A stretch of 63,689 bases of DNA, filler included, from Octopus bimaculoides (lineage: Eukaryota), in the NCBI RefSeq assembly GCF_001194135.2. It is 5 parts of 5 records of this genome, joined end to end, with 100 filler letters (N's around TTAATTAATTAA, not from the genome) between each part and the next. Parts side by side here need not be neighbours in the genome. Positions count along the whole stretch, not along the records: positions 11,489 to 37,603 come from NC_068986.1; 4 more parts are not named here. One strand, written 5' to 3'. How positions within the stretch are numbered: the first letter of the stretch is position 1; every line of letters begins with the position of its first letter. This document shows, one piece after another, positions 25,560-37,603 of the stretch. A model generated the notes under the pieces. The model ran no database searches and was not told where the DNA came from. It saw nothing but the letters and a program-made list of their open reading frames with translations. The translations under genes and the position numbers were made by a program.

Positions 25560-27259
25560 GTTTCAAATTATGGCACAAGTTCAGCTGAGTTTGCTGGGAG
25601 GAGAAGACGTACAACGACCTTAGTGCTTGGCTGGCACTTATTTTATTCGATCTCGAAAGGTTGAAAGACAAATGTAATCTCAGCGGTATTTGAACTCAGA
25701 AAGTTAATCCTTTAGAAGTACAACACGCATAAATAATCTTTTCTAGTGAAGGCACAAGGCCTGAAATTTTTGGGGAGGGGACTAGTCGATTACATCGATC
25801 TCGAAAAGATGAGAGGGAAATTCGACCTCGGCGGAATTTGAGCCCGGAACGTATCAGAAAACGATATACCACAATCATTTTTCTCGGTGTGCTAACAATT
25901 CTGCCAGTTCACCGAATAAAATGTTGAATGCAACAATTAGTAATTATTAAAATCTTTTCTACTATTAAAGGCACAAAACCTGAGATTTGTGGGGAGACTA
26001 ACAGTCGATTACATCGACCCCAGTGTTTCAGTGGTACTTAATTTAGCGATCCCGAAAGGATGAAAGGCAAAGTGGACCTAGGCTGAATTTGAACCGAGAA
26101 CATGAAGAGACATGGAACGCTGGTAACTATTTAACCAGGTGTGCTAACGACTCTTTTCTACTCTAGGCACAAAGTCCGAAATTTTTTAGGGGGAGGAAGC
26201 CAGTCGATTAGATCGACCCCAAAAGATGAAAGGCAAAGTCAACTTCTGCGGAATTTGAACTCAGAACGTAAAGACAGACGAAATACCTATTTCTTTACTG
26301 CCCACAAAGGGCTATACACAGAGGGGACAAACAAAGACAGACAAACGATTAACTCGATTATATCAACCCCAGTGCGTAACTGGTACTTATTTAATCGACC
26401 CCGAAAGGATGAAAGGCAAAGTCGACCTCAGCGTAATTTGAACTCAGAACGTAACGACAGACGAAATACCGTTAAGTATTTTTCCCGGCGTACTAAAAAT
26501 TCTGCCAGCTCGCCGCCTGAACAGAGCTAAATAATACAATGTGCTTGCAAATGGTATTCCACTTACAATGACGCTATTTCTAATCGCATTTTATATCTAT
26601 GCGTTATATTTTCTTTCGTAAAAACTGATCTGTTCTTTTCTTCAAGATGTATGTTACAAATTTTAAAATGAAGTAAAATATAATAACTGCACATAATTCT
26701 TCAAAAATAGTTCCGAATTTCCCATTTTTCATGCTTTCAATACCTGTAAAAGTAGTATTAATGATATAAACAGTAATGATGGATAACGTTGTTTTGCAGC
26801 GCGTTTATTTGAGCAATTATTTCGATGAATTCCTATTAAAGAAGAAAATAAATAAATGAATATACATATATATATATAAGAAATAAATAAATTGTAAAAA
26901 CTACCAGAAAGAAATGGCTGCAAAATCAAAAACAACATTTACAAAAGACTCCTTTCCACAGAGTTTACTGTGTTAACAACGAAATTGTTATCGTGAATTC
27001 TTTTGTACTCTAGGCCCAAAGCTCGAAATTTTGGGGGAAGGGACCAGTTGGTTAGATCAACCCCAGTGCGCAACTGGTACTTAATTTATGGAGCCCGAAA
27101 GGATGAAAGGCAAAGTCGATCTCGGCGAAATTTGAACTCAGAACACAAAGAAAGACGAAATACTGCTAAGCATTTCGTCCGGTGAGCTAAGGTTTCTGCC
27201 AGCTCACCGCCTTTAAGACAGACGAAATACCGCTAAACATTTCGCACGACGCGTTAACG
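25560..27259 (-). mobile_element. Cluster of at least six co-oriented family A SINEs or fragments
   Basis: TTTGAACTCAG (B box, reverse) or variants near 25690, 25838, 26088, 26257, 26438 and 27132; a partial copy at 27214-27259 runs into the gap. Confidence 0.8.
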
Positions 27260-28069
27260 NNNNNNNNNNNNNNNNNNNNNNNNNNNNNNNNNNNNNNNNN
27301 NNNNNNNNNNNNNNNNNNNNNNNNNNNNNNNNNNNNNNNNNNNNNNNNNNNNNNNNNNNNNNNNNNNNNNNNNNNNNNNNNNNNNNNNNNNNNNNNNNNN
27401 NNNNNNNNNNNNNNNNNNNNNNNNNNNNNNNNNNNNNNNNNNNNNNNNNNNNNNNNNNNNNNNNNNNNNNNNNNNNNNNNNNNNNNNNNNNNNNNNNNNN
27501 NNNNNNNNNNNNNNNNNNNNNNNNNNNNNNNNNNNNNNNNNNNNNNNNNNNNNNNNNNNNNNNNNNNNNNNNNNNNNNNNNNNNNNNNNNNNNNNNNNNN
27601 NNNNNNNNNNNNNNNNNNNNNNNNNNNNNNNNNNNNNNNNNNNNNNNNNNNNNNNNNNNNNNNNNNNNNNNNNNNNNNNNNNNNNNNNNNNNNNNNNNNN
27701 NNNNNNNNNNNNNNNNNNNNNNNNNNNNNNNNNNNNNNNNNNNNNNNNNNNNNNNNNNNNNNNNNNNNNNNNNNNNNNNNNNNNNNNNNNNNNNNNNNNN
27801 NNNNNNNNNNNNNNNNNNNNNNNNNNNNNNNNNNNNNNNNNNNNNNNNNNNNNNNNNNNNNNNNNNNNNNNNNNNNNNNNNNNNNNNNNNNNNNNNNNNN
27901 NNNNNNNNNNNNNNNNNNNNNNNNNNNNNNNNNNNNNNNNNNNNNNNNNNNNNNNNNNNNNNNNNNNNNNNNNNNNNNNNNNNNNNNNNNNNNNNNNNNN
28001 NNNNNNNNNNNNNNNNNNNNNNNNNNNNNNNNNNNNNNNNNNNNNNNNNNNNNNNNNNNNNNNNNNNNN

Positions 28070-28110
<41 letters not shown>

Positions 28111-28246
28111 GTGACGAATTGTGCGAGTATTTGAAGTACCGACGCTGCCTAACTAGTTATAATGTGATATAACTCACAAAATGAATGGCATTTGTCACTG
28201 AGCGGGGTTAAAATCATCTGCTTGAAAACAATATAGATGTTACATT

Positions 28247-28252
28247 TTTATT
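28247..28252 (-). promoter_or_regulatory. Possible polyadenylation signal for the GPCR
   Basis: AATAAA on minus about 400 nt after the stop; weak evidence in AT-rich DNA. Confidence 0.2.
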
Positions 28253-28647
28253 TCAAAAACCTTTATATGTGGAGGCTACAAGGATTACAAGAAACAATCG
28301 AAGACATCCTGTAAACGGAATAAAGTGTAGAATGTTTGTAAGCCAAATCATTCATCAATTAGTAAGTGAGATTTTTGACTACGCGGAATTTTTCATCAAG
28401 AACAAGTTATAGGTTTCTTGCCTTTGACTAAAAACATCGTGCAGAAACATTTAGGTACGATAAAATAATTCGGTCTCTCACATCACACTTCATAGTAGCA
28501 ATGTGATTACAATATTATAATCCGTTTAAAAGCAATTCCTATCTATTTGCATATTAAGTCAATAATAATCAAATAATAAAATGATTTTACTGCTTCGCCA
28601 TTATGTAATTTCTGCAAATGAATATTCTCATGAAAGATTTAAATGAC

Positions 28648-29526
28648 TTAAATTGCTGATTTAGCGACAACATTGTTTTCGCATATTCGTTTGAAAGAAT
28701 CGTCTGCTAAAAGGTTTGCCACAAGTGTTATGAATGTGAAATTCCATCTTTTATAAACAAACGCATTTAGAAAATGATGACAAAACACAGTGAACATATA
28801 CAACGTAAATGCCTTATTTGCGAACATTTCTACGTATTGGGTATATAACAATGTTACGCTTGATGTGATGATGTTCTTTATGAGTACAAAACATAATGAT
28901 GACTTACTTATCTGCCAAACGTCTACACAACAGCAAAATTTACAAATGGTTTTATAAAAGACATAAATACTGCAACAAGACATTAATATATCTGGAACAA
29001 CTAAAATTGTTGTAATAAAAATACTTGTTTCTTGTGTTTTATACTCTTGAAAGCAGACAGATAATTGCTCCGATATATCCAAGCATGAAAAGATGCTAGC
29101 TGCGACGGAAAAAATAATGATAGTTAATATAAATGTGATGGTAGGCTTCATCGCGCAAATTTTGCTATGTTTCAATGGAAAATATACACTCAGAAATGTT
29201 TGAAAGGATATAACAGTTGCTATCCATATGGAACTGATTCTAGAAACGTTCCATATGAAAGTAAATATTTTACATGTCTTCTGATTAAAATAGAAAAAAA
29301 TATTGAAGTCACTCAAATAGAAAATCTCTAATAAACAAGCAAACATGACCACTGAATCTACCACGTTTAGTGTCATCACATATAGTGGTAGTTGAGATTT
29401 GGAATTTCTCTTTTTCAAATTAGTGATAAAACACCAAATATTCATAAATATCCCAATGACGAACAATACAGCAAATACGATGGTTGCAACATTCGTAAAT
29501 CTGAAAACTCCCTGCTTATTAAACAT
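28648..29526 (-). CDS. Divergent class A (rhodopsin-like) 7TM GPCR, single coding exon, 292 aa; orphan or chemosensory-type
   Basis: Uninterrupted 292-codon ORF in AT-rich DNA with seven hydrophobic segments. TM1 GIFMN (N1.50), TM2 LNVVD (D2.50), TM3 CKIF..SSIW..ISFQTFLSVYFPLK (C3.25 and S-x-W..R-like..V-x-x-P pattern), ECL2 Cys, TM5 Pro (VVPD), TM7 NAFVY. In-frame TAA lies just upstream of the ATG. Confidence 0.88.
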   Translation of the reverse strand: MFNKQGVFRFTNVATIVFAVLFVIGIFMNIWCFITNLKKRNSKSQLPLYVMTLNVVDSVVMFACLLEIFYLSDFNIFFYFNQKTCKIFTFIWNVSRISSIWIATVISFQTFLSVYFPLKHSKICAMKPTITFILTIIIFSVAASIFSCLDISEQLSVCFQEYKTQETSIFITTILVVPDILMSCCSIYVFYKTICKFCCCVDVWQISKSSLCFVLIKNIITSSVTLLYTQYVEMFANKAFTLYMFTVFCHHFLNAFVYKRWNFTFITLVANLLADDSFKRICENNVVAKSAI

Positions 29527-29528
29527 TT

Positions 29529-29634
29529 CTTATAAATGAAAACTACTTAATTTCAACTCTTAATAAGCTGTTATATCAAATATTATTGAACAAATAATGC
29601 ACGTCTTGCGTAATATTGTTTTGTATTTACTTAC
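29529..29634 (-). other. Candidate 106-nt 5'UTR intron of the GPCR gene
   Basis: Minus strand has GTAAGT at 29634-29629 and TTTTCATTTATAAG|AA-ATG, with the acceptor 2 nt before the start codon. The spliced junction would still put TAA in frame, so the upstream exon would be non-coding. Confidence 0.4.
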
Positions 29635-30722
29635 AGAATGTACCAAAGAAAATCTCCGTAAATATCCAGTTAGTGAAAATGGTGGTAATTTATGTAATGT
29701 TTTGTAACTTGTATGCTAAAGGGACAATAATAGTTCTGTGTTTTTTTTCCTTTAAATAATCTCCAAGTCGATTTTTGCAAAATGTATCACAATTTTATAT
29801 CGTTACTCTTGATTCAACTTTCGTAGAGATATTAGGCAAGTGTTCTTGCTACAGCGCTGTTTTTATGCATGACGGTTCTCCATTTTAAGAACTATGAAAA
29901 GAAACTATATATATTCACTGGTTTTGTATAACCGTATAATTACATACGATAATATTTATTAGCAATCGCCTTCGACGGATTGACAATGCGTAAGAGAAAT
30001 CAATAAGTGGAACAGGTGTTTCTTAAAGCAAATAGAACAAAACAGGTATAAATAATCCAGTATATCTTTGGATATTTTATGACGAGAAAGTAGCTTCCAA
30101 ACAAAATCACTGACATCAGCACTGAAATAATCTACGTTCATATAAACACCCATCACAAATGAGGTTGCATTTTTGATGATAATGATGACGACGATACATT
30201 TAAATTCATCTCTATATTCATCTGTATGTCAATATTAGATAAGAAAGTAAACAAATGTTATTCTTATAGTGGGTGGTGCTAGATTTACTTTTTCCTGTTA
30301 TTATTTGTATTGGATTAGAAATTCTCTTTGTTATATCTAATCTAATTGATTAGAGTTTAACACAAGCGAACTATGTGGACAATATGACATATACATACAT
30401 ACATATATACATACATACACACACAGAGACACACACACAGACACACACACACACATACACATATATATTTATAAAACAGTGAGAGAGGCCGTTCGACAAG
30501 CAGACAGAGTAGTTCGTTTCATTTCTAAATTACTGAATTTTCATTAACATTTATATAAGAATAAATACGTGTGAGGGACTTTTCTGTTACGACGTCTCAC
30601 TAAATCAGTGATCGATAAGTGCTTTTAATAATACAATTTCACTCTAAACCAGGATGAGCCCAATATGAAATGCATGTGACTATTAAAGAAACAAAGTGGT
30701 TTGGACGACAGATGCTCAAAGC

Positions 30723-36277: not shown

Positions 36278-36909
36278 NNNNNNNNNNNNNNNNNNNNNNN
36301 NNNNNNNNNNNNNNNNNNNNNNNNNNNNNNNNNNNNNNNNNNNNNNNNNNNNNNNNNNNNNNNNNNNNNNNNNNNNNNNNNNNNNNNNNNNNNNNNNNNN
36401 NNNNNNNNNNNNNNNNNNNNNNNNNNNNNNNNNNNNNNNNNNNNNNNNNNNNNNNNNNNNNNNNNNNNNNNNNNNNNNNNNNNNNNNNNNNNNNNNNNNN
36501 NNNNNNNNNNNNNNNNNNNNNNNNNNNNNNNNNNNNNNNNNNNNNNNNNNNNNNNNNNNNNNNNNNNNNNNNNNNNNNNNNNNNNNNNNNNNNNNNNNNN
36601 NNNNNNNNNNNNNNNNNNNNNNNNNNNNNNNNNNNNNNNNNNNNNNNNNNNNNNNNNNNNNNNNNNNNNNNNNNNNNNNNNNNNNNNNNNNNNNNNNNNN
36701 NNNNNNNNNNNNNNNNNNNNNNNNNNNNNNNNNNNNNNNNNNNNNNNNNNNNNNNNNNNNNNNNNNNNNNNNNNNNNNNNNNNNNNNNNNNNNNNNNNNN
36801 NNNNNNNNNNNNNNNNNNNNNNNNNNNNNNNNNNNNNNNNNNNNNNNNNNNNNNNNNNNNNNNNNNNNNNNNNNNNNNNNNNNNNNNNNNNNNNNNNNNN
36901 NNNNNNNNN

Positions 36910-37537
36910 CAAAGTTTGGCACCAATCCTTCCAGTATTTTCCATATGTATATTATTACATATCTCTCCCGCCTGCGCTCCAGGGAGTAGAGACCTAGTGC
37001 CTTCAGTCGCTCCCTGTAGTTCATCTGTTGGACTGTGGCGATCTTTTTTGTATAGTGCCGCTGAATTGCCTCGAGTTCTGCTGTCCGCTTAACACTGTGT
37101 GGTGACCACAACTGAGAGCAATAGTCTAGGCGGCTCAGAACAAATGTCTTCCACAAAGTCAACATGACTTTTTGATCCCTTGTACGGAATGTCCTCAGTA
37201 TCCACCCTGCCAGTTGTCTGCACTTTGCTGTCAACTTGATAAAGTGCATGTGACATGATGCATCACTACACATATTGATGCCCAGATCTCTTACTGTTTG
37301 TGGTTCTGGGATTGCAGTACCTCCAGGCCCTGTGTATGCTAGTTGGGAGGTACTTGTGGTCTTGTAGCGCAGTACTTGAAATTTTTTTGTATTGGACTGC
37401 ATATTATTTTGATCTGCCCACTCATATATTGCATTTAGGCCATTCTGCAGGCTTACAGTATCATCAGGATTCTTTATTGCATTAGATATCTTTGTGTTAT
37501 CAGCATAGCTAGTGACAGTGGCACTCCGAGTGACCGT
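36910..37537 (-). mobile_element. LINE reverse transcriptase C-terminal fragment, CR1/L2 group
   Basis: SYADNTK (YADD box), VRDLG, SRLDYCSQLWSP, RLKALGLYSLERRRER..WKILEG; about 200 open codons ending in the gap. Confidence 0.9.
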
Positions 37538-37603
37538 ATATATATTTACATTTATATATATATATGTATATATACACATATATATACATATATGTATATA
37601 TAT

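What the first reader, a model, noticed from the sequence alone, without database searches (positions are those of the whole stretch)
28648..29526. Intact but motif-stripped class A GPCR: candidate lineage-specific chemoreceptor
Seen: a 292-aa intronless ORF with 7 TMs, only about 10 residues before TM1 and no N-terminal N-x-S/T. ECL2 and ICL3 are very short. DRY reads FQTF (no R3.50), W4.50 and CWxP are absent, and NPxxY reads NAFVY. N1.50, D2.50, the C3.25/ECL2 Cys pair and P5.50 are kept. Established: the TM3 S-x-W..R..V-x-x-P pattern typifies lophotrochozoan FMRFamide-receptor-like/srw-like orphan GPCRs, some of them chemosensory. Inference: an intact frame in DNA where everything else has decayed implies selection. 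Loss of the Arg suggests atypical or G-protein-independent signalling.
Basis: partly seen in the sequence, partly recalled or inferred. Interest (0 to 1): 0.75.

Follow-up and report, generated by a model that had tools for sequence, protein, structure and literature searches.

The report
Unannotated orphan octopod GPCR lacking DRY arginine
This is a real, selection-maintained, single-exon gene for a small orphan rhodopsin-class receptor from a tiny octopus-type family, and its one truly lineage-specific oddity is loss of the arginine that normally couples such receptors to G proteins; a chemosensory role is not shown.

Summary
Window 28648-29526, on the minus strand, is a complete 292-aa single-exon ORF.

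The gene is under selection. An orthologous locus in a second species is 77% identical across ORF and flanks and keeps the same start and stop. The ORF has one in-frame indel against about 16 expected. It has no stops against about 8.7 expected. NG86 dN/dS is 0.46, against 0.79 for simulated neutrality.

"Motif-stripped" overstates the case:
- Absence of W4.50, W6.48 and P7.50 is inherited from the wider lophotrochozoan FMRFamide-receptor-like/Srw-like group.
- P6.50 was lost in a four-cluster family whose one named member is from Octopus bimaculoides.
- Only Arg3.50 was lost in this lineage. It reads T here and A in the ortholog, and R in the sister paralogs and in 26/26 outgroups.

The chemoreceptor reading is untested and partly contradicted. 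The gene is single-copy, has a 1:1 ortholog, and is not part of an expansion. The only expression datum concerns the 28%-identical O. bimaculoides paralog, which is skin-specific.

Verdict: an unannotated new member of a known kind. Interest is modest.

The parts
28648..29526 (-). Complete single-exon CDS of a 292-aa orphan class A-type 7TM receptor. The stop codon is 28648-28650 and the ATG is 29524-29526.
   Evidence: ORF list. Start and stop positions are conserved in the species-X ortholog, and an in-frame TAA lies two codons upstream. AF2 7TM model. Foldseek matches are all class A GPCRs. The exact protein is absent from a collection of about 15 billion proteins, so no gene model with this exact product is on record there.
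29194..29202 (-). Codons CAA ACA TTT = Q109-T110-F111, the position of D/E-R-Y at the cytoplasmic end of TM3. Arg3.50 is replaced by Thr.
   Evidence: phmmer and profile alignments to BLT1 place SFQTF on SLDRY. In the 30-sequence alignment this column is R in 26/26 outgroups and in both sister paralogs. The ortholog reads GAA GCA TCA = E-A-S.
28753..28767 (-). N254-A-F-V-Y258, the TM7 equivalent of NPxxY. N7.49 and Y7.53 are kept and position 7.50 is Ala.
   Evidence: N254 and Y258 are invariant across 30 sequences. Position 7.50 is Phe in 25/26 outgroups and A or V in the family.
28828..28917 (-). TM6 (residues 204-233), with neither Trp6.48 nor Pro6.50.
   Evidence: AF2 helix limits. The sequence KSSLCFVLIKNIITSSVTLLY has no W or P. 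A TM6 Pro is invariant in the 26 outgroups and absent in all four family members.
29413..29493 (-). TM1 (residues 12-38), including N29 = N1.50.
29182..29283 (-). TM3 (residues 82-115), with C85 = C3.25 and the S99-x-W101 ... V-x-x-P117 pattern.
28939..29079 (-). ECL2 (residues 150-164, with C158) and TM5 (residues 165-196, with P178 = P5.50).
28651..28704 (-). C-terminal tail (residues 275-292), 83% identical to the ortholog. It ends ...AKSAI. The A-x-S-A-[I/Y] ending is shared with the 28%-identical paralogs.
   Evidence: Regional identity. Invariant A288, S290 and A291 in the four-sequence alignment. Its reading as a class I PDZ ligand is inference only.
28070..30421 (-). Block orthologous to the species-X contigs L001-L004 (gene plus about 895 nt upstream and about 580 nt downstream). 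It is bounded by microsatellites and an assembly gap.
   Evidence: blastn and MAFFT give 77% identity overall. The flanks are 74-77% identical with 24 indel events. The ORF is 78% identical with one 3-nt indel.

Best explanation
Window 28648-29526 (minus strand) is a functional, single-exon gene for a small (292 aa) orphan seven-helix receptor.

Placement. It belongs to a very small family. Four protein clusters form two paralogous lineages. The one member that carries a species name is from Octopus bimaculoides, so an octopod restriction is inferred from that. The family descends from the lophotrochozoan FMRFamide-receptor-like/Srw-like branch of class A GPCRs.

Shown:
- The fold is that of a class A GPCR, and the residues N1.50, D2.50, the C3.25-ECL2 cysteine pair and P5.50 are kept.
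- Start, stop and frame are preserved in an ortholog separated by dS of about 0.47.
- The protein is under moderate purifying selection, strongest in TM1-TM3 and the C-terminal tail.
- Arg3.50 is absent in both orthologs and present in the sister paralogs and all outgroups examined.

Inferred:
- The arginine was lost once, before the two species split, and the protein has been maintained without it since.
- The protein sits in the plasma membrane with the N-terminus outside.
- It binds a small ligand in the TM pocket. This rests on the tiny N-terminus and short loops.
- It has weak, constitutive or non-canonical coupling rather than ordinary agonist-driven G-protein activation, because it lacks R3.50, P6.50 and P/F7.50.
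- Output may run through another partner, possibly via the conserved C-terminal ...SAI tail.
- It probably acts in a peripheral tissue, by analogy with the paralog's skin-only expression.

Rough confidence: real selected receptor gene, about 0.85. Atypical coupling, about 0.4.
For: Gene and fold:
- The ORF is real and far beyond chance.
- AF2 gives pLDDT 79.5 and pTM 0.79 with seven helices. The top 50 Foldseek PDB matches are all class A GPCRs.
- The family profile matches BLT1 at E = 5e-11.
- hhalign of the family against 26 lophotrochozoan orphan receptors gives probability 99.6% and E = 7e-24 over TM1-TM5.

Family size:
- Exhaustive phmmer over 1.84e9 representatives finds only P0001 (64% identity) and P0002 (29%) as full-length relatives.
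- A profile search adds only P0104.

Selection, from the ortholog comparison:
- One in-frame indel in 879 nt against 24 events in 1302 nt of flank. The Poisson P is 1.6e-6.
- 8.7 stops are expected under neutral substitution and none is seen.
- NG86 omega is 0.46. Simulated neutral omega is 0.79 +/- 0.15, and 1 of 500 simulations is as low.
- Omega is 0.26 for residues 1-115, and the tail is 83% identical.
- Among the four species-X contigs there are 3 SNPs in the ORF against 20 in the flanks, Fisher p = 0.009.

Arginine loss:
- Position 3.50 is R in 26/26 outgroups and in P0002 and P0104. It is T (ACA) here and A (GCA) in the ortholog, one step apart.

Paralog expression:
- A0A0L8IB86 has Tau = 1 and is expressed in skin only (PMC6408891 Table S2).
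Against: - There is no expression evidence for this gene. The Logan contigs look genomic, being bounded by microsatellites with no poly(A).
- No gene model with exactly this product is on record in the protein collection.
- Constraint is weak over TM4-TM7, where omega is 0.6-0.7. That is not clearly below the simulated neutral value.
- ORF nucleotide identity (78%) barely exceeds that of the flanks (74-77%).
- The window protein falls below Pfam's 7tm_1 gathering score.
- TM6-TM7 homology is not significant on its own (E = 0.019).
- Some DRY-less class A receptors still signal, often constitutively (PMC10941346), so loss of the arginine does not prove loss of G-protein coupling.
- The C-terminal PDZ idea, the ligand size and the tissue are inference only.
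- The source species is not identified.
Confidence: 0.5

Rival explanations
1. It is a conventional small-peptide receptor, for example for an RFamide-type peptide like its distant relatives. It still activates a heterotrimeric G protein despite lacking Arg3.50, and another basic residue or an altered interface compensates.
For: Its closest outside relatives are FMRFamide-receptor-like/Srw-like peptide-receptor-type GPCRs. The structural neighbours are mostly peptide receptors such as opioid, NMU, NPY, neurotensin and SSTR. It has 1:1 orthology, and ECL1 (5/5 residues) and TM2 (81%) are well conserved, which fits a fixed endogenous ligand. DRY-less receptors that still signal are known (PMC10941346).
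Against: All 26 outgroups and both sister paralogs keep the arginine. Positions 3.49-3.51 are not even conserved between the two orthologs (QTF against EAS), so this site is unconstrained rather than re-purposed. An omega of 0.46 is higher than I would expect for a conserved neuropeptide receptor, although that comparison rests on my own knowledge and was not computed here. P6.50 and the residue at 7.50 have also changed.
Confidence: 0.22
2. It is a lineage-specific chemoreceptor that detects external small molecules in skin, suckers or the olfactory organ.
For: It is small and intronless, with a minimal N-terminus and short loops. It evolves fast (omega 0.46). The family appears restricted to octopus-type species. 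The O. bimaculoides paralog is expressed only in skin. Related outgroup receptors hit nematode chemoreceptor Pfam models.
Against: There is no tandem array and no paralog elsewhere in the 26-kb piece. Only two paralogous lineages exist in huge databases. A clean 1:1 ortholog exists, whereas lophotrochozoan chemosensory-type expansions lack 1:1 orthologs and keep DRY and NPxxY (PMC11886862). The paralog shows zero expression in sucker. The extracellular half is no more variable than the cytoplasmic half (62% against 62%). The window protein has no Srw or Srsx hit.
Confidence: 0.15
3. It is a gene in the course of dying. Constraint relaxed after G-protein coupling was lost, and the open frame is a leftover with no present function.
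For: TM4-TM7 evolves at omega 0.6-0.7. ORF nucleotide identity is close to that of the flanks. The DRY site drifts freely between orthologs. The window protein scores lower against 7tm_1 than its ortholog does (18.7 against 37 bits). All three SNPs in the species-X ORF are non-synonymous. The exact product is not on record in the protein collection.
Against: Two lineages have both kept 292-293 codons open, with the same start and stop, across dS of about 0.47. The joint chance is about 1.6e-4 for stops times about 1.6e-6 for indels. Whole-gene omega is below simulated neutrality, with 1 of 500 simulations as low. SNP density in the ORF is a quarter of that in the flanks. The C-terminal tail and TM2 are strongly conserved.
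Confidence: 0.07

Closest known systems
Octopus bimaculoides A0A0L8IB86 (Ocbimv22023137m; P0002), named 'G-protein coupled receptors family 1 profile domain-containing protein', and its species-X ortholog P0104
   Same: Same small family, and the only full-length relatives outside the direct ortholog (E = 5e-17). It is 291 aa and single-exon, with an 876-nt gene span. It shares the minimal N-terminus, the lack of Trp and Pro in TM6, an N-x-F-x-Y motif in TM7, and a C-terminus ending S-A-[I/Y].
   Different: Only 26-28% identical. It keeps E-R-T at the DRY position. It passes Pfam's 7tm_1 gathering score (38.5 bits). Its ortholog pair is 81% identical against 64% here, so it may evolve more slowly if both pairs span the same species split, which is not established. 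It has a published expression record, skin only.
Lophotrochozoan FMRFamide-receptor-like/Srw-like orphan class A receptors (e.g. Batillaria KAG5707147.1 = P0106; Lineus XP_064626810.1 = P0046)
   Same: Profile-profile probability is 99.6% and E = 7e-24 over TM1-TM5. It shares TM3 S-x-W ... V-x-x-P, the ICL2 Cys, no W4.50, no W6.48, and no Pro at 7.50.
   Different: Those receptors are 350-450 aa or longer, with long N-termini and a long ICL3. They keep R3.50 (26/26), P6.50 (invariant) and F7.50 (25/26). They hit Pfam Srw and Srx, which the window protein does not.
Vertebrate class A receptors without a canonical DRY (GPR20, GPR141 and GPR151 named in PMC10941346; atypical chemokine receptors and C5aR2 from my own knowledge)
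   Same: A class A fold with the DRY arginine or the whole motif altered. This is associated in the literature with constitutive, biased or absent G-protein signalling.
   Different: There is no specific sequence relationship. This is an analogy about mechanism only, and none of the signalling properties was tested here.
Leukotriene B4 receptor 1 (PDB 7VKT, 7K15), the best solved structure by sequence
   Same: E = 5e-11 with the family profile. It aligns over TM1-TM5, including N1.50, D2.50, C3.25 and the ECL2 Cys.
   Different: Alignment covers TM1-TM5 only, with no detectable similarity in TM6-TM7. BLT1 has DRY and NPxxY. There is no orthology.

Membership tests
Class A (rhodopsin-like) GPCR, Pfam PF00001 | Seven-helix bundle with the class A fold | tested here: met
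   AF2 gives pLDDT 79.5 and seven helices. The top 50 Foldseek PDB matches are all class A GPCRs, aligned over 262-319 columns with query-normalised TM-scores of 0.55-0.75.
Class A (rhodopsin-like) GPCR, Pfam PF00001 | Score at or above the Pfam 7tm_1 gathering cut-off (30.5 bits) | tested here: not met
   The window protein scores 18.7 bits, E = 1.3e-3, over residues 29-192 only. The ortholog P0001 scores 37.0 bits, P0002 38.5 bits and P0104 30.9 bits, so all three pass.
Class A (rhodopsin-like) GPCR, Pfam PF00001 | N1.50, D2.50, C3.25-ECL2 disulfide cysteines, P5.50 | tested here: met
   N29, D57, C85, C158 and P178 are aligned to these positions. They are invariant or nearly so in the 30-sequence alignment.
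Class A (rhodopsin-like) GPCR, Pfam PF00001 | E/D-R-Y with Arg3.50 | tested here: not met
   The motif reads Q109-T110-F111, and E-A-S in the ortholog.
Class A (rhodopsin-like) GPCR, Pfam PF00001 | CWxP in TM6 and NPxxY in TM7 | tested here: not met
   TM6 has no W or P. TM7 reads N-A-F-V-Y, so N7.49 and Y7.53 are kept and P7.50 is absent.
Lophotrochozoan FMRFamide-receptor-like/Srw-like group of class A | Significant profile similarity to members of the group | tested here: met
   hhalign of the family (A3) against 26 group members (A4) gives probability 99.6% and E = 6.9e-24 over 185 columns, TM1-TM5. The C-terminal halves alone are not significant.
Lophotrochozoan FMRFamide-receptor-like/Srw-like group of class A | TM3/ICL2 signature S-x-W ... 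[DE]-R-[FY] ... V-x-x-P ... C | tested here: inconclusive
   S99, W101, V114, P117 and C124 are present, but the central Arg is missing. 61 of the 63 pattern-bearing neighbours have Arg.
Lophotrochozoan FMRFamide-receptor-like/Srw-like group of class A | TM7 N-x-x-x-N-F-x-x-Y and a conserved TM6 Pro | tested here: not met
   Position 7.50 is Ala here and Phe in 25/26 neighbours. The TM6 Pro is invariant in the neighbours and absent here.
Lophotrochozoan FMRFamide-receptor-like/Srw-like group of class A | Hit to Pfam Srw (PF10324), Srx or Srsx | tested here: not met
   There is no such hit at E up to 10 for the window protein. The neighbours hit Srw and Srx. P0002 and P0104 have only sub-threshold Srbc hits.
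Lineage-specific chemosensory GPCR expansion | Many recent paralogs, usually in tandem arrays | tested here: not met
   There is no second copy in the 26-kb piece. Only two paralogous lineages are found among 1.84e9 representatives and 5.8e9 clusters. The paralog is listed in group 0, not expanded, in PMC6408891 Table S2.
Lineage-specific chemosensory GPCR expansion | No 1:1 orthologs between species | tested here: not met
   A 1:1 ortholog exists with collinear flanks, 77% identical over about 2.3 kb.
Lineage-specific chemosensory GPCR expansion | Expression in chemosensory cells and a response to external chemicals | not testable with these tools
   The only available datum concerns the paralog, which is expressed in skin only with zero in sucker.
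Atypical, decoy or biased class A receptors | Altered DRY plus no G-protein activation, with arrestin or scavenging activity | not testable with these tools
   The altered DRY is shown. The signalling behaviour needs cell assays.
Pseudogene or decaying ORF | Stops or frameshifts, omega not different from neutral | tested here: not met
   There are no stops or frameshifts in either species. Omega is 0.46 against a neutral 0.79 +/- 0.15. The indel deficit has P = 1.6e-6.

The most novel reading that the evidence does not exclude
An octopus-type seven-helix protein has given up agonist-driven G-protein activation. It lacks R3.50, P6.50 and P/F7.50 and has been kept that way by selection since before the two species split. 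It now works in a peripheral tissue such as skin as a non-canonical receptor. It might be constitutive, arrestin- or scaffold-coupled through its conserved ...SAI C-terminus, or a ligand-binding or accessory subunit for another sensory pathway.
Probability: 0.25. Interest if true: 0.55.

Novelty: new member of a known kind. Interest (0 to 1): 0.3.

Why it matters
The result adds a gene for which no model with this exact product is on record. It also defines a very small orphan receptor family whose one named member is from Octopus bimaculoides.

It gives a dated natural experiment. A class A receptor lost Arg3.50, while its sister paralog keeps it, and stayed under selection afterwards. Comparing the two paralogs in the same cells could show what a DRY-less invertebrate GPCR still does.

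It also corrects a tempting over-reading. Most of the "missing motifs" are the normal state of the FMRFamide-receptor-like/Srw-like branch, so motif absence judged against vertebrate consensus should not be taken as a sign of exotic function in lophotrochozoan receptors.

The practical weight is modest. Orphan, fast-evolving class A GPCRs are common in molluscs.

Tried and rejected
1. I tested whether the cytoplasmic face is relaxed while the ligand side is constrained. The extracellular and intracellular halves are equally conserved (85/137 each), so I rejected it. The real gradient is TM1-TM3 plus the tail (conserved) against TM5-TM7 (variable).

2. AF2 with only the four family sequences gave pLDDT 46, too weak to use. 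A 30-sequence alignment was needed.

3. I tried three routes to identify the source species and species X. Text searches for the SRA run numbers found nothing relevant. The third homology search, on the reverse-transcriptase fragment, gave only 62-65% identical unnamed hits. tRNA and Rfam scans were empty. The octopod origin is therefore inferred only from the O. bimaculoides paralog.

4. I looked for tandem paralogs in the piece with tblastn, using the window protein, P0001, P0002, P0104 and two outgroups. None was found.

5. A profile comparison of the C-terminal halves alone (TM6-H8) was not significant (E = 0.019, probability 1.2%). The TM7 numbering therefore rests on the MAFFT alignment, where N254 and Y258 are invariant.

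6. I considered using the Logan contigs as transcript evidence and rejected it. They begin or end in microsatellites or other non-coding sequence, none ends in a poly(A) run, and they carry long non-coding flanks.

7. An opsin reading, prompted by the paralog's skin expression, fails. Position 7.43 is F248, not Lys (sequence inspection).

8. The repeat search over the piece was dominated by N runs and microsatellites. Nothing in it relates to the gene.
Full report
**What is there.**

The finding's coordinates hold a 292-aa ORF, but it lies on the minus strand (28648-29526). The ATG is at 29524-29526 and the TAA stop at 28648-28650. An in-frame TAA sits two codons upstream of the ATG, so the frame cannot extend 5' without splicing.

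The piece is AT-rich, with about 30% G+C around the gene. A 292-codon open frame has a probability near 5e-10 per start, or about 2e-5 over the whole piece on both strands.

The rest of the 26-kb piece has no other convincing gene. It holds:
- microsatellites and four assembly gaps;
- a DDE_3 transposase remnant at 21235-21732;
- a reverse-transcriptase remnant at 36913-37579;
- SINE-like repeats.

No tRNA or Rfam family was found.

**Is it a 7TM class A receptor?**

Pfam matches only 7tm_1 weakly: 18.7 bits, E = 1.3e-3, residues 29-192, below the 30.5-bit cut-off.

phmmer against PDB sequences gives class A GPCRs only. The best is BLT1 at E = 9e-7, aligned over TM1-TM5. A profile of the four family sequences raises this to E = 5e-11.

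AlphaFold2 with four sequences was poor (pLDDT 46). With a 30-sequence alignment it gave pLDDT 79.5 and pTM 0.79. The helices are at 12-38, 46-78, 82-115, 126-149, 165-196, 204-233 and 238-274. The top 50 Foldseek matches in the PDB are all class A GPCRs, aligned over their full length with query-normalised TM-scores of 0.55-0.75.

- N29 = N1.50, D57 = D2.50, C85 = C3.25, C158 in ECL2, and P178 = P5.50 are kept.
- Q109-T110-F111 lies on D-R-Y.
- TM4 has no Trp.
- TM6 has no Trp or Pro.
- N254-A-F-V-Y258 lies on NPxxY.
- The N-terminus is 11 residues with no sequon.
- ECL2 is 15 residues and ICL3 is 7.

**Relatives.**

The word-indexed search of 5.8 billion clusters found one relative, P0001 (290 aa, 64% identical).

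An exhaustive phmmer over 1.84 billion representatives found only two full-length relatives. These are P0001 (E = 2e-110) and P0002 (291 aa, 29% identical, E = 5e-17). Everything else has E above 1e-7 and, with rare exceptions such as P0046, matches no further than TM5. A profile search added only P0104.

- P0002 is UniRef A0A0L8IB86 from Octopus bimaculoides.
- P0001, with three near-identical variants, and P0104 come from Logan assemblies of the run series SRR11869384-94. I call the source "species X".
- P0104 is 81% identical to P0002.

Species X therefore has one ortholog of the window gene and one of the O. bimaculoides gene. The family consists of two paralogous lineages. The window's exact protein is not in the collection of about 15 billion proteins, so no gene model with this exact product is on record there.

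I could not identify either source species. An octopod origin is inferred from the paralog.

**Orthology and selection.**

The four species-X contigs (L001-L004) are one locus. They are 99.2-99.6% identical to each other. They align collinearly with window 28070-30421 at 77% identity. Start and stop codons are at identical positions.

| Region | Aligned nt | Identity | Indel events |
|---|---|---|---|
| 5' flank | 819 | 76.9% | 13 |
| 3' flank | 483 | 73.7% | 11 |
| ORF | 879 | 78.0% | 1 (3 nt, in frame) |

At the flank rate, 16.2 indels are expected in the ORF. P(at most 1) is 1.6e-6.

I placed the observed 193 substitutions at random, using the flank-derived spectrum. This gives 8.7 stop codons on average and none of 2000 trials without a stop. 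The Poisson estimate of P(no stop) is about 1.6e-4.

NG86 gives dN 0.22, dS 0.47 and omega 0.46. The same simulation, conditioned on no stops, gives a neutral omega of 0.79 +/- 0.15. One of 500 trials was as low as observed.

Constraint is uneven:
- residues 1-115: omega 0.26, with TM2 at 0.15;
- residues 116-199: omega 0.62;
- residues 200-292: omega 0.67;
- the last 18 residues are 83% identical.

Among the four species-X contigs, SNP density in the ORF is a quarter of that in the flanks (3 against 20, Fisher p = 0.009).

The amino-acid constraint is moderate.

**What "motif-stripped" really means.**

I aligned the family with 26 of its nearest full-length outside hits. These are lophotrochozoan orphan receptors. 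All nine that I scanned hit Pfam 7tm_1, and all nine also hit Srw, eight of them above Srw's cut-off.

The losses fall into three layers:
- **Group level.** The outgroups already lack W4.50 and W6.48, and 25 of 26 have N-F-x-x-Y rather than NPxxY. These "losses" are the normal state of this branch.
- **Family level.** The TM6 proline is invariant in the outgroups and missing in all four family members. F7.50 has become A or V.
- **Lineage level.** Arg3.50 is present in 26/26 outgroups and in P0002 and P0104 (E-R-T). It is T (ACA) in the window and A (GCA) in the ortholog.

The two codons are one step apart and several steps from CGG. The simplest reading is a single loss before the species split, followed by continued maintenance of the gene. 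That reading is inference.

The neighbouring positions differ between the orthologs (QTF against EAS), so the site now drifts.

Profile-profile comparison of the family with the 26 outgroups is strong over TM1-TM5, with probability 99.6% and E = 7e-24. It is not significant for TM6-H8 alone.

63 of 98 carry it, 61 of them with Arg.

**Function.**

Nothing here tests ligand or signalling.

Arguments against a chemoreceptor repertoire gene:
- it is single-copy;
- the family has two lineages;
- a 1:1 ortholog exists;
- the published octopus GPCR census puts the paralog in the non-expanded group (PMC6408891 Table S2);
- lophotrochozoan chemosensory-type expansions are described as tandem, lacking 1:1 orthologs, and retaining DRY and NPxxY (PMC11886862).

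Arguments that leave it open:
- the gene is small, intronless and fast-evolving;
- the paralog Ocbimv22023137m has Tau = 1 with all expression in skin and none in sucker or nervous tissue, across 12 O. bimaculoides tissues.

That datum concerns a 28%-identical paralog, not this gene.

Loss of R3.50 together with P6.50 makes ordinary agonist-driven G-protein activation unlikely but does not exclude signalling. DRY-less receptors with constitutive activity are documented (PMC10941346).

The C-terminus A-x-S-A-[I/Y] is conserved across both paralog lineages. It could be a PDZ ligand, which is inference.

The hypothesis that the cytoplasmic face is selectively relaxed was tested and rejected.

The Logan contigs are bounded by microsatellites and lack poly(A). 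They are probably genomic and give no expression evidence.

**Verdict.**

This is a new member, with no matching gene model on record, of a known kind: a divergent orphan class A GPCR of the FMRFamide-receptor-like/Srw-like branch. Its one lineage-specific feature of interest is loss of Arg3.50 under continued selection.

Interest is modest, at 0.3.

Noticed in passing
O. bimaculoides Scaffold3495:29071-29946 (-) (paralog P0002; not in the window): The only annotated family member, A0A0L8IB86 (Ocbimv22023137m), spans 876 nt and so is a single exon. In Table S2 of PMC6408891 it has Tau = 1, with all its expression in skin and none in the other 11 tissues, including sucker.
   Followed up: partly
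window 28651-28665 (-), residues 288-292; also the C-termini of P0001, P0002 and P0104: The C-terminus A-x-S-A-[I/Y]-COOH is conserved across paralogs that are only 28% identical. It resembles a class I PDZ-binding ending. This was not tested.
   Followed up: no
window 28927-28935 (-), residues C198-C200: A Cys-Cys-Cys cluster lies at the junction of TM5 and ICL3. It is shared by the window protein and its species-X ortholog but not by the paralogs. It may be a palmitoylation site.
   Followed up: no
window 25650-27200: Five or six diverged copies (65-90% identical) of a SINE-like unit lie just beyond the assembly gap downstream of the gene. The unit contains ...GGCACAAGGCCTGAAATTTTTGGGGAGGGG... 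and ...CCCGAAAGGATGAAAGGCAAAGTCGACCTCAGCG.AATTTGAACTCAGAACG... (families D8, D9 and D11).
   Followed up: no
window 14915-14970, 19902-20175, 27260-28069, 36278-36909: All four N gaps in the piece abut (TA)n runs, so the assembly broke at TA microsatellites. The 27260-28069 gap starts about 580 nt downstream of the gene's stop, so the 3' end of the gene's transcription unit cannot be fully read.
   Followed up: no
window 21235-21732 (+): A 165-aa ORF has a sub-threshold DDE_3 (Tc1/mariner-type transposase) match at E = 5.6e-5. It looks like a decayed transposon remnant.
   Followed up: partly
window 36913-37579 (-): This is a reverse-transcriptase (LINE-type) remnant cut by the N gap. More than 1100 database relatives were found, the best only 62-65% identical and none named to a useful species.
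   Followed up: partly
window 23068-23372: Long ATC/GAT-type trinucleotide tracts create a spurious 156-aa poly-Asp/poly-Met ORF.
   Followed up: no
L001-L004 (species-X ortholog contigs): The 23 variable sites among the four runs each show only two alleles, in mosaic combinations. This fits either one heterozygous individual sequenced several times or a small population. All three variants inside the ORF are non-synonymous.
   Followed up: partly
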